Counted from the first letter of the whole stretch, positions 53,454 through 54,584 are shown. The stretch is 63,186 bases of DNA, filler included, from Octopus bimaculoides (GCF_001194135.2; 4 parts of 4 records of this genome joined end to end with filler, not necessarily neighbours in it), one strand, 5' to 3'. Numbers and translations are program-made. The notes: generated by a model from the letters alone, not told the origin.

Positions 53454-54584
53454 ATGGCTGACATATTTTTAAGCCATGATATTAAACGACTTCTTAGCGA
53501 GAAATTTTTGGTCATTATTGGCGACTCTATCCAGCGAGCCATTTACAAAGACATTGTGTCAATGTTAAGTGACAGAGGAAATAATTTTTATTTGACTGAC
53601 GGCGACATGAGAGTAAAAGGCGAACTGTCATTCAGTGGAGACACTTTATTGAAAGGCGGCTGTCAAAACGGTATGACAAACGGTATTGATTATTGTGAAG
53701 TCAGGCAGTATCGGAACGACTCATATTTTATACGATTTTATTTTGTAACTCGATGTTTTAACAAAAAAGTTGAAGAAATTCTGGACGACCTCAAAAAAAT
53801 TCCTCCTGACATTTTAATAATGAACTCCTGTCTGTGGGACTTGAGTCGCTATGGCGCGAACGGTTGGCCAGCCTACAAAGAGAAACTTAAAATTCTATTC
53901 GACTCACTCTTGAAGACGCTCAAACCCAGCTGTCTAGTCATATGGAACAGTACCTTACCAGTCTCTACAGATGCGTACGGTGGTTTCTTCGGATCGAAAG
54001 CCCGCTCCCAGAAACAGAGACTCCCCACAGATATACTAGCAGCTAACGAATTTGTCTACAACCTTATCAAGGACTACCCGTTTGATTTTCTCGACCTGCA
54101 CTACTTTCTTCGCTACCACAGGCACAGATTGAGTAAAGATGGAATTCACTGGGACATGACGGCTCACCGCCGCATCAGCAATCTCCTTTTCACACACGTT
54201 TCTGAAGCTTGGGGGATTCCTTTACCAGGCCGCGTGCCTCCCCAATTCCACCCGTGTCGACTGGACAGCACGAAGGCGTCCGGAAGCGGCGATGCATTCC
54301 CATGCATCCATCCCTATTTGGGTTCAATCTTTACAGGATTCGGCAAAGACAACCAGAGAATGAGCACTTTAATTAGCAGCTTCCGTGAAGTGAGCGAGCA
54401 TGTCACATATCGGCGAATGCACGACGATATACTGTATGGACGAAGGGGGAGGAGATTGCACGCCTCGATGAGTCTTGTGTCGAAATCCAAGCAGAAAGTG
54501 TTGCACATGAGAAGATGCAAGCGTTTAAACTCCACCAACAGACGCTCAAAACGATCCAAAAAACGAAAAAGCGAAACCACATAA
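53454..54584 (+). CDS. PCED1A: PC-esterase domain-containing protein (PCED1A/B, FAM113-like SGNH hydrolase), intronless, 376 aa, nested in ALKBH4 intron 2
   Basis: Uninterrupted ORF with AAAATGG start. Motifs KFLVIIGDSIQRAIYKD (block I Ser), KGELSF, EVRQY, RFYFVTR, PDILIMNSCLWDLSRYG (block III Asn), FLDLHY and KDGIHWDMTAHRRISNLLFTHVSEAWG (D-x-x-H) match PCED1A/B as I recall them. Basic C-terminal tail. A versus B orthology is not resolvable from here. Confidence 0.92.
   Translation: MADIFLSHDIKRLLSEKFLVIIGDSIQRAIYKDIVSMLSDRGNNFYLTDGDMRVKGELSFSGDTLLKGGCQNGMTNGIDYCEVRQYRNDSYFIRFYFVTRCFNKKVEEILDDLKKIPPDILIMNSCLWDLSRYGANGWPAYKEKLKILFDSLLKTLKPSCLVIWNSTLPVSTDAYGGFFGSKARSQKQRLPTDILAANEFVYNLIKDYPFDFLDLHYFLRYHRHRLSKDGIHWDMTAHRRISNLLFTHVSEAWGIPLPGRVPPQFHPCRLDSTKASGSGDAFPCIHPYLGSIFTGFGKDNQRMSTLISSFREVSEHVTYRRMHDDILYGRRGRRLHASMSLVSKSKQKVLHMRRCKRLNSTNRRSKRSKKRKSETT

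What the first reader, a model, noticed from the sequence alone, without database searches (positions are those of the whole stretch)
53454..54584. Intact intronless PC-esterase (PCED1-like) gene nested on the same strand inside ALKBH4 intron 2
Seen: a 1131-nt uninterrupted ORF with the full SGNH set (GDS Ser, NSCLWD Asn, DGIH Asp/His) between ALKBH4 exons 2 and 3. Same-strand nesting is the rarer configuration. The inner gene's poly(A) site (candidate 55032) would truncate ALKBH4 transcripts before the catalytic exon, and host transcription would run through the inner promoter. PCED1 proteins belong to the PC-esterase family (related to the Cas1p N-terminal domain and plant TBL/PMR5) and are functionally poorly characterised. 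I am not aware of a described ALKBH4-PCED1 linkage, but I have not searched. Inference: a mutually exclusive or co-regulated demethylase/acyl-esterase locus.
Basis: partly seen in the sequence, partly recalled or inferred. Interest (0 to 1): 0.75.

Follow-up and report, generated by a model that had tools for sequence, protein, structure and literature searches.

The report
Octopus esterase retrogene inside ALKBH4 intron
An intact, selectively maintained, intron-free copy of a poorly understood esterase gene (PCED1) sits inside an intron of the octopus ALKBH4 gene; it is most likely an old reverse-transcribed copy, it is already in public annotations, and it is ordinary in kind.

Summary
The piece is Octopus bimaculoides chromosome CM046625.1. 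A 1131-nt ORF (53454-54584, +) encodes a 376-aa PCED1-family protein with intact GDS, NSCLWD and DGIH motifs. It lies in ALKBH4 intron 2 (52095-58183) on the host's strand.

- **Already annotated:** the protein is already in NCBI and UniRef. O. sinensis RefSeq has the same nested pair.
- **Under selection:** the ORF is intact or nearly so in three octopods, with dN/dS 0.08-0.14.
- **Fold:** the AlphaFold model's best PDB matches are SGNH acetyl-esterases.
- **Origin:** chiton, oyster and abalone orthologues share three coding introns with the same positions and phases. The octopus gene has none. In those species PCED1 and ALKBH4 are not nested. A retrogene is therefore the best reading. It is the only PCED1-family cluster recovered from octopus proteomes.
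- **A dead counterpart:** an unidentified eukaryote contig, whose ALKBH4 is sister to the octopus one, carries a stop-ridden, intron-free PCED1 relic in the same intron and orientation. The insertion is therefore old, and ALKBH4 survives without the guest.
- **Not tested:** A splice-in fusion is excluded in O. sinensis.

This is a new member of a known kind, of low to moderate interest.

The parts
42009..42110 (+). ALKBH4 coding exon 1 (34 codons, donor cag|gtaaac)
   Evidence: tblastn with Haliotis ALKBH4; matches RefSeq isoform X1 P0227; sequence read
51885..52094 (+). ALKBH4 coding exon 2 (70 codons, ends in phase 0, donor cag|gtacg)
52095..58183 (+). ALKBH4 intron 2, the host intron (6089 nt, includes N gap 57325-57708)
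   Evidence: the same intron is 0.66 kb in chiton and 1.2 kb in abalone, with no PCED1
53066..53340 (+). Upstream block conserved in three octopods: two inverted CCAAT boxes (ATTGG 53180-53184, 53206-53210), a CRE-like TGACGTC (53218-53224) and TGACGACGTAAC (53271-53282). Putative own promoter (inferred).
   Evidence: three-way alignment; 83% identity to the Logan species, against 52-76% in the other non-coding stretches
53430..53435 (+). Acceptor-like ctacag 18 nt before the ATG. It is in frame with ALKBH4 exon 2 in O. bimaculoides and the Logan species. O. sinensis reads AGA TAG at that point.
53454..54584 (+). PCED1-family CDS, single exon, 376 aa: SGNH domain aa 1-~265, then a low-confidence tail ending in a basic KRSKKRK cluster
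53520..53528 (+). GDS codons (predicted nucleophile Ser25)
53823..53840 (+). NSCLWD codons (block III Asn124)
54138..54149 (+). DGIH codons (Asp229 and His232)
54681..54770 (+). A-rich tract about 100-190 nt after the stop, variable in length between species. Possible decayed poly(A) tail of the retrocopy (inconclusive).
55032..55037 (+). AATAAA inside a 30-nt block identical in three octopods. Likely poly(A) signal of the nested gene.
58184..58702 (+). ALKBH4 coding exon 3 (last exon), carrying the 2OG-Fe(II) oxygenase core (HFD ... H)

Best explanation
The ORF is a functional, independently transcribed gene for a PCED1-family SGNH-type esterase.

**Origin (inferred).** A processed PCED1 mRNA was reverse-transcribed and inserted, in sense orientation, into intron 2 of ALKBH4. 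This happened in an ancestor of Octopus, probably early in the cephalopod lineage. In octopods the copy was kept under purifying selection. It appears to be the only PCED1-family gene left, which makes it an orphan retrogene or a case of retrogene replacement.

**Enzyme mechanism (inferred from family knowledge).** Ser25 of GDS acts as nucleophile. His232 and Asp229 of DGIH act as base and acid. Asn124 of NSCLWD contributes to the oxyanion hole. The enzyme removes an O-acyl group, probably acetyl, from an unknown substrate. There is no N-terminal signal-like segment, and the C-terminus is basic (KRSKKRK). These two features suggest an intracellular, possibly nuclear, enzyme.

**Expression (inferred).** The gene probably uses its own CCAAT/CRE-type promoter (53066-53340) and its own AATAAA (55032). 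ALKBH4 pre-mRNA reads through and splices the whole unit out.

**Shown here:** the anatomy, homology, fold, selection, loss of ancestral introns, the lineage-specific location, and a dead counterpart in another lineage.

**Inferred only:** the retroposition mechanism, the promoter and poly(A) usage, the substrate, and the localisation.
For: - **Identity.** The window is 100% identical to O. bimaculoides CM046625.1.
- **Homology.** PCED1A/1B-like proteins of molluscs, brachiopod, echinoderms and vertebrates match at E down to 4e-87, with 49-55% identity over aa 1-260. The catalytic columns are invariant or nearly so.
- **Fold.** The AlphaFold model has pLDDT mostly above 85 over aa 1-260. Its best PDB matches are SGNH hydrolases: 4h08, peptidoglycan O-acetylesterase Ape1, and the acetyl-xylan esterases Axe2 and AlAXEase.
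- **Selection (Nei-Gojobori).** dN/dS is 0.076 against O. sinensis (dS 0.23). It is 0.14 against a third octopod (dS 0.33) and 0.04-0.09 in the catalytic domain. Indels in the tail are multiples of three.
- **Ancestral introns.** Chiton, oyster and abalone share introns after aa 25 (phase 1), aa 52 (phase 0) and aa 130 (phase 2). The octopus gene has none of them.
- **Location.** The chiton genes are 15 Mb apart. The abalone genes are on different scaffolds. No ALKBH4 lies within 10 kb of the oyster PCED1 gene. No PCED1 was found in the outgroup ALKBH4 loci, and no ALKBH4 near their PCED1 loci.
- **Sole copy.** Two searches of 5.8 billion proteins returned no other cephalopod PCED1 cluster.
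- **Old insertion.** Contig L011 has ALKBH4 exons 2 and 3 that are sister to the octopus ones. Between them, on the same strand, is an intron-free PCED1 relic with at least 6 stops, frameshifts, a 1-kb insert and GD* in place of GDS.
- **Regulatory elements.** The upstream block and the AATAAA block are conserved in three octopods.
Against: - No clear retroposition scars were found. There are no target-site duplications, and the A-rich tract 54681-54770 is only suggestive.
- Absence of a multi-exon parent rests on annotated proteomes, not on a whole-genome search.
- No transcript evidence could be examined. No Logan contig carries the exact protein. The O. vulgaris annotation seems to lack the gene, because no O. 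vulgaris member is in the cluster.
- Pfam models do not match the protein at all, even at E up to 10.
- O. sinensis carries a 1-nt deletion that truncates its annotated product to 303 aa. This is probably an assembly error but it is unproven.
- The organism behind L011 is unidentified.
Confidence: 0.7

Rival explanations
1. The locus is a regulatory unit. Use of the inner poly(A) site truncates ALKBH4 before its catalytic exon, or host read-through silences the inner promoter. The demethylase and the esterase would then be mutually exclusive or co-regulated.
For: - Sense orientation, with a conserved AATAAA at 55032 upstream of the catalytic exon.
- The arrangement persists in three octopods, and as a relic in L011.
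- Interference between same-strand host and nested genes is an established phenomenon (general knowledge).
Against: - No expression data are available.
- The two genes are unlinked in chiton and abalone, and no ALKBH4 lies within 10 kb of the oyster PCED1 gene.
- ALKBH4 exons 2 and 3 stay open in L011 although the guest has decayed.
- Full-length and exon-skipping ALKBH4 isoforms that splice across intron 2 are annotated.
Confidence: 0.12
2. The ORF is an alternative terminal exon of ALKBH4. Exon 2 (phase 0) would splice to the acceptor-like ctacag at 53435, giving an ALKBH4 N-terminus-PCED1 fusion protein.
For: From 53436 the frame is open and in phase with the ATG at 53454 in O. bimaculoides and in the Logan species. 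The acceptor-like motif is conserved in all three.
Against: - In O. sinensis the same phase reads AGA TAG directly after the acceptor.
- Being in frame and open over 18 nt is expected by chance about one time in four.
- Public annotation calls two separate genes in two species.
- The ATG context is still recognisable in the L011 relic.
Confidence: 0.04
3. The nesting arose by DNA-level events rather than retroposition. Either the gene moved and its introns were lost later, or the arrangement is ancestral in molluscs and was broken up in the other classes.
For: - No target-site duplications or clean poly(A) tail were found.
- A 690-aa intron-free PCED1-like ORF exists in another unidentified eukaryote (L012), so intron-free PCED1 genes are not unique.
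Against: - All three ancestral introns are missing at once and the location is new, which is the classic retrogene signature.
- Three mollusc classes keep the introns, and in chiton and abalone the two genes are unlinked.
- The outgroup ALKBH4 intron 2 is only 0.66-1.2 kb.
Confidence: 0.12
4. The ORF is a non-functional retropseudogene that has stayed open by chance, or the nesting is an assembly artefact.
For: - No Pfam hit.
- Frameshift in the O. sinensis assembly.
- The gene is apparently absent from the O. vulgaris annotation.
- N gaps lie nearby in the window.
Against: - dN/dS is 0.08-0.14 at dS 0.23-0.47, and the catalytic residues are kept.
- L011 shows what neutral decay of this copy looks like.
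- Two independent assemblies plus the Logan contigs agree on the order.
- Once the single missing base is bridged, the O. sinensis tail reads in frame to the same stop, with dN/dS 0.16.
Confidence: 0.03

Closest known systems
PCED1A/PCED1B (FAM113A/B), the animal branch of the PC-esterase / SGNH hydrolase group
   Same: - Clear sequence homology: E 4e-87 to mollusc PCED1A-like proteins, and 39-45% identity to vertebrate PCED1A/B.
- Same GDS, NSCLWD and DGIH motifs.
- Predicted fold matches SGNH acetyl-esterases.
- Variable low-complexity C-terminal tail with a basic end.
   Different: - A single coding exon, against 4-5 coding exons in other molluscs.
- A 3-residue insertion (DRGNNF).
- A diverged segment at aa 178-195, where other members have PEVEFMNSTLRLD.
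- A different genomic location.
- No biochemical function is known for any family member.
Orphan retrogenes and retrogene replacement (for example amphioxus SYCP1, PMC5803294; human orphan retrogenes, PMC3548309)
   Same: - An intron-free copy at a new locus.
- No parental multi-exon gene detectable.
- The copy is under purifying selection and apparently carries the family's function.
- Regulatory elements were acquired at the new site.
   Different: - Absence of the parent is shown only at the level of annotated proteomes.
- Retroposition scars are not recognisable.
- This copy landed in sense orientation inside another gene's intron.
Same-strand nested (host intron / guest gene) pairs in animal genomes
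   Same: The guest CDS lies wholly within one host intron. It probably has its own promoter and poly(A) signal. The host splices across it.
   Different: Most described nested pairs are on opposite strands (general knowledge). Here the orientation is sense, and the pair has lasted long enough to leave a dead relic in a second, deeply diverged lineage.
ALKBH4 (host gene)
   Same: - Three coding exons, with the phase-0 intron positions also seen in chiton.
- 99-100% identity to the RefSeq O. bimaculoides protein.
- The 2OG-Fe(II) oxygenase core lies in the last exon.
   Different: Intron 2 is enlarged to 6.1 kb by the guest gene and repeats, against 0.66 kb in chiton and 1.2 kb in abalone.

Membership tests
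PCED1 / PC-esterase (SGNH hydrolase superfamily) | Significant sequence homology to named PCED1A/B proteins across the catalytic domain | tested here: met
   E 4e-87 to 1e-50, with 39-55% identity over aa 1-260. The profile search agrees.
PCED1 / PC-esterase (SGNH hydrolase superfamily) | Block I GDS with the nucleophile Ser | tested here: met
   G23-D24-S25. G23 and S25 are conserved in at least 90% of 41 sequences.
PCED1 / PC-esterase (SGNH hydrolase superfamily) | Block III Asn (NSCLWD) | tested here: met
   N124 is nearly invariant. S125, W128 and D129 are invariant.
PCED1 / PC-esterase (SGNH hydrolase superfamily) | Block V DxxH (Asp/His of the triad) | tested here: met
   D229, G230 and H232 are invariant.
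PCED1 / PC-esterase (SGNH hydrolase superfamily) | SGNH (flavodoxin-like alpha/beta/alpha) fold | tested here: met
   AlphaFold pTM 0.72, with the domain mostly at pLDDT above 85. Top Foldseek PDB matches are SGNH esterases: 4h08 at E 1e-6 and target-normalised TM-score 0.69, then Ape1, Axe2 and AlAXEase. A weak profile hit to PatB and DUF459 covers the DxxH region.
PCED1 / PC-esterase (SGNH hydrolase superfamily) | Match to a curated Pfam model (PC-Esterase or a GDSL/SGNH lipase model) | tested here: not met
   No Pfam family matches even at E up to 10. Most named PCED1 proteins in the database likewise carry no precomputed Pfam domain. The models therefore fail for the whole animal branch, not only for this protein.
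PCED1 / PC-esterase (SGNH hydrolase superfamily) | Esterase activity dependent on the Ser/His/Asp set | not testable with these tools
   This needs recombinant protein. No family member has a defined substrate in the literature searched.
Retrogene (processed, reverse-transcribed gene copy) | Absence of all introns that the parental or orthologous gene has within the CDS | tested here: met
   Three introns with identical positions and phases occur in chiton, oyster and abalone. Octopus has none.
Retrogene (processed, reverse-transcribed gene copy) | Genomic location unrelated to that of orthologues | tested here: met
   The gene is nested in ALKBH4 only in Octopus and in L011. In chiton and abalone the two genes are unlinked, and no ALKBH4 lies near the oyster PCED1 gene.
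Retrogene (processed, reverse-transcribed gene copy) | Poly(A) tail remnant at the 3' end | tested here: inconclusive
   The A-rich tract at 54681-54770 varies in length between species.
Retrogene (processed, reverse-transcribed gene copy) | Flanking target-site duplications | tested here: not met
   No convincing flanking direct repeat was found. This is expected to be erased for an insertion older than the split from L011.
Retrogene (processed, reverse-transcribed gene copy) | Status of the parental gene (present = duplicate; absent = orphan or replacement) | tested here: inconclusive
   No other cephalopod PCED1 cluster appeared in two proteome-scale searches. A whole-genome tblastn of octopus was not possible.
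Nested gene with an independent transcription unit | The entire guest CDS lies inside one host intron, and the host exons splice across it | tested here: met
Nested gene with an independent transcription unit | Own transcription start and poly(A) site shown by RNA data | not testable with these tools
   Only conserved CCAAT/CRE-like motifs and an AATAAA were seen.

The most novel reading that the evidence does not exclude
The sense-oriented guest gene has been kept in ALKBH4 intron 2 for a very long time because the two genes are functionally coupled. In this reading, its intronic poly(A) site acts as a regulated switch that yields a catalytically dead ALKBH4 stub or a bicistronic or chimeric transcript. 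That switch would link actin/DNA demethylase activity to an intracellular O-acyl esterase in cephalopods.
Probability: 0.06. Interest if true: 0.55.

Novelty: new member of a known kind. Interest (0 to 1): 0.3.

Why it matters
**What it offers.** This is a clean, datable example of retrogene fixation inside a host intron in sense orientation, which selection usually removes. It has two contrasting outcomes: kept under strong constraint in octopods, and decayed in a sister lineage. If the parental gene is really gone, the octopus depends on a retrocopy for its only PCED1 enzyme, which is an instance of retrogene replacement in a lophotrochozoan.

**Use as a marker.** The insertion could serve as a rare genomic change for cephalopod phylogeny.

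**Limits.** It does not open a new kind of biology. The gene is already annotated, the PCED1 substrate remains unknown, and the proposed regulatory coupling is untested.

Tried and rejected
- **Pfam.** Scans of the ORF at E 0.01 and at E 10 gave no family. Homology had to come from phmmer-type searches.
- **Isoform look-up.** The ALKBH4 isoform X2 is not on record. The locus was reached through the nested protein instead.
- **Retroposition scars.** A direct-repeat search around the gene found only low-complexity or short matches.
- **Organism identification.** Searching papers for the run and assembly accessions of the Logan contigs (SRR11869385-94) and of L011 (ERZ21867824) gave no hits.
- **Parental gene in the L011 organism.** Two ENA PCED1-like hits on long contigs were checked (P0245 and P0092). 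Both come from other samples.
- **Nucleotide alignment of octopus and L011 intron 2.** Only microsatellite matches and a 57-nt stretch of the CDS aligned. Promoter conservation could not be assessed at that depth.
- **Literature.** No paper links ALKBH4 with a nested gene. The PCED1 papers found are biomarker, association or lncRNA studies with no biochemistry.
- **tRNA scan.** None were found in the piece, so there is no tRNA-SINE clue.
- **Fusion-protein idea.** It was considered and rejected because of the O. sinensis TAG.

Full report
**What the piece is.** The finding's piece is 100% identical to Octopus bimaculoides assembly GCA_001194135.2, chromosome CM046625.1, around 33.40 Mb, N gaps included.

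**The host gene.** I mapped ALKBH4 with the RefSeq O. bimaculoides proteins and the Haliotis orthologue, and read the splice sites.
- Coding exon 1 is 42009-42110.
- Exon 2 is 51885-52094, with donor cag|gtacg in phase 0.
- Exon 3 is 58184-58702.
- Exon 3 holds the 2OG-Fe(II) oxygenase core (weak Pfam hit; 410 ALKBH4 relatives).
- Intron 2 is 52095-58183.

**The observation.** The ORF listing gives an ORF at 53445-54584 (+), with the first ATG at 53454. That is 376 aa and 1131 nt with the stop. It lies inside intron 2 on the host's strand. The motifs are at aa 23-25 (GDS), 124-129 (NSCLWD) and 229-232 (DGIH). In a 41-sequence alignment these columns are invariant or at least 90% conserved. AATAAA is at 55032-55037.

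**Family.**
- Pfam finds nothing, even at E 10.
- The search of 5.8 billion proteins returns 101 relatives. Nearly all the named ones are called PC-esterase domain-containing protein 1A or 1B. Mollusc and brachiopod hits show 49-55% identity over aa 1-260, with E down to 4e-87.
- An AlphaFold model built on that alignment has pTM 0.72. Its pLDDT is mostly above 85 for aa 1-260 and below 50 for aa 274-364.
- Its best PDB matches are SGNH hydrolases: BT3161 (4h08), the peptidoglycan O-acetylesterase Ape1, and the acetyl-xylan esterases Axe2 and AlAXEase. Rab-type flavodoxin-like folds follow.
- The protein starts 22 residues before the GDS, so no signal-like segment precedes the domain.
- It ends in a basic cluster (RRSKRSKKRKSE) that is kept in all three octopod sequences.
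- No paper found gives a biochemical function for PCED1 proteins.

**Already annotated.** The exact 376-aa sequence is in NCBI, UniRef and EukProt. Its 90% cluster also holds XP_029651117.1, 'PC-esterase domain-containing protein 1B-like' of O. sinensis. In both species' assemblies the gene is called inside the span of the 276-aa ALKBH4 gene, on the same strand. The gap-free O. sinensis locus is colinear with the window, so the N gaps do not create the arrangement.

**Selection.** A third octopod is represented by four Logan contigs (L001-L004). They share 80.7% nucleotide identity with the window and are colinear with 52694-55276. They hold an intact 379-aa ORF; the gene caller had started it at an internal Met.
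- Nei-Gojobori dN/dS is 0.14 against this species (dS 0.33).
- It is 0.076 against O. sinensis (dS 0.23), and 0.04-0.09 in the catalytic domain.
- O. sinensis has a single-base deletion after codon 255, which explains its 303-aa annotation.
- With that position bridged, the tail stays in frame to the same stop. Its dN/dS is 0.16, and its indels are multiples of three.
- An assembly error or a very recent change is therefore likely.
- The CDS is the best conserved part of the locus, at 89% identity to the Logan species. The upstream block 53066-53340 is at 83%. The other non-coding stretches range from 52% to 76%.
- That upstream block carries two inverted CCAAT boxes and CRE-like TGACGTC motifs, conserved in all three species. 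So is the 30-nt context of the AATAAA.

**Origin.** I reconstructed exact exon chains for orthologues from three other mollusc classes.
- Chiton has introns after aa 25 (phase 1), 52 (phase 0) and 130 (phase 2).
- Oyster has them after aa 27, 54 and 131, with the same phases, plus one more intron.
- Abalone has the same three positions, shifted by a 39-aa N-terminal extension.

These introns are therefore ancestral for molluscs, and the octopus CDS has lost all of them.

The location is also new.
- In the chiton the two genes lie 15 Mb apart on one chromosome, and ALKBH4 intron 2 is 0.66 kb.
- In abalone they are on different scaffolds, and the intron is 1.2 kb.
- No PCED1 similarity is found in those ALKBH4 loci.
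- No ALKBH4 lies within 10 kb of the PCED1 genes of chiton, oyster or abalone.

Simultaneous loss of all introns together with a new location is the signature of retroposition. Scars are not recognisable: there is no target-site duplication, and only an A-rich tract of variable length at 54681-54770. Neither protein search returned any other cephalopod PCED1 cluster. The nested gene therefore seems to be the only family member in annotated Octopus proteomes. This fits the known categories of orphan retrogene and retrogene replacement (PMC3548309, PMC5803294).

**A dead counterpart elsewhere.**
- The closest non-Octopus ALKBH4 (P0103) sits on a 520-kb eukaryotic contig of an ENA metagenome assembly (L011, ERZ21867824).
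- It shares 63-65% identity in exon 3, and 60% in exon 2 against 39-42% for abalone.
- It is the sister of Octopus in a neighbour-joining tree of 120 sequences.
- Exon 2 is at 2359-2568 and exon 3 at 9983-10531.
- Between them, on the same strand, lies a PCED1-like sequence running from an ATG at about 5000 to about 6823.
- It is contiguous across the three ancestral intron positions, but it is dead.
- It has at least six in-frame stops, frame changes and a roughly 1-kb insertion. It reads GD* where GDS should be, and DRIH where DGIH should be.
- Two independent insertions of a PCED1 retrocopy into the same intron in the same orientation are very unlikely.
- The insertion therefore predates the split of Octopus from this organism. 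At the nucleotide level the two introns no longer align.
- The organism is probably another cephalopod, but I could not identify it.
- This relic shows what neutral decay of the copy looks like.
- It also shows that the ALKBH4 exons flanking the guest stay open after it has decayed.

**The regulatory idea.** Nothing here tests expression.

Points in its favour:
- The orientation is sense.
- A conserved poly(A) signal lies upstream of the catalytic exon.

Points against an obligatory coupling:
- The genes are unlinked in the outgroups.
- The L011 relic has decayed while the flanking ALKBH4 exons stay open.
- ALKBH4 isoforms that splice across the intron are annotated in three Octopus species.

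I also looked at an acceptor-like ctacag at 53430-53435. If ALKBH4 exon 2 spliced to it, the product would be in frame with the PCED1 ATG in O. bimaculoides and the Logan species. In O. sinensis the same phase reads AGA TAG, so a conserved fusion protein is excluded.

**Verdict.** The finding is real and correctly described. It is a functional, retrogene-like PCED1 esterase gene nested in sense orientation in ALKBH4 intron 2. The insertion is old, it is conserved in octopods, and it is already present in public annotation.

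Noticed in passing
window 48408-48477 (+): Rfam SNORD2 (C/D-box snoRNA) match above the gathering score (39.9 against 37 bits). It lies inside ALKBH4 intron 1, on the host's strand. It has terminal stem GGATGT/ACATCT, ATGATG and CTGA boxes, and is conserved in O. sinensis (L005 about 2796-2866).
   Followed up: partly
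window 52638-53023: Two to three copies of a direct repeat of about 165-205 nt sit just upstream of the conserved promoter-like block (52638/52843/53008, 52698/52901, 52727/52933). A related TCAYTGGTCAATT motif recurs at 52906 and 53178.
   Followed up: no
window 47821-47874: The first coding exon of RefSeq ALKBH4 isoform X2 (MIMYTYTPEFVVIYLY...) lies in TA/CA-rich low-complexity DNA and looks like a doubtful model.
   Followed up: no
L005 about 10763 (O. sinensis): A single-base deletion truncates the annotated PCED1 product to 303 aa. The downstream sequence is still in frame to the shared stop and is under constraint, so an assembly indel is suspected.
   Followed up: partly
window 43804-44345 (-), 49094-49462 (+), 51431-51862 (+): Spurious ORFs share near-identical peptides (…FQSFDCGHAG.PPF.R.NRP.DLFFVSLVLIL… and …SSSSSSFNVRF.CWHGLD…). 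These are copies of interspersed repeats scattered through the ALKBH4 introns in both orientations.
   Followed up: no
L012 653-2725 (ENA ERZ25073805): A 690-aa uninterrupted PCED1-like ORF in another unidentified eukaryote, next to Hairy/HLH gene fragments. This is another intron-free member of the family.
   Followed up: no
L014 (Haliotis cracherodii JAJLRC010000024.1): In abalone, ALKBH4 (5001-8360, +) itself lies within the span of a 702-aa BTB/WD40 gene on the opposite strand.
   Followed up: no
L007 13589-15260 (Liolophura sinensis): A second 2OG-FeII_Oxy_2 gene (242 aa) lies directly downstream of chiton ALKBH4, on the same strand.
   Followed up: no
L011 8904-9377 and 5574-6604: A reverse-transcriptase-like ORF (LINE fragment) lies in the unknown organism's ALKBH4 intron 2. 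A roughly 1-kb insertion containing an A-run (about 6446-6458) splits the dead PCED1 relic.
   Followed up: no
O. vulgaris proteins P0224 and P0225: O. vulgaris has an annotated exon-2-skipping ALKBH4 isoform (exon 1 joined directly to exon 3). No O. vulgaris PCED1 protein is in the 90% cluster, so the nested gene seems to be unannotated there.
   Followed up: no
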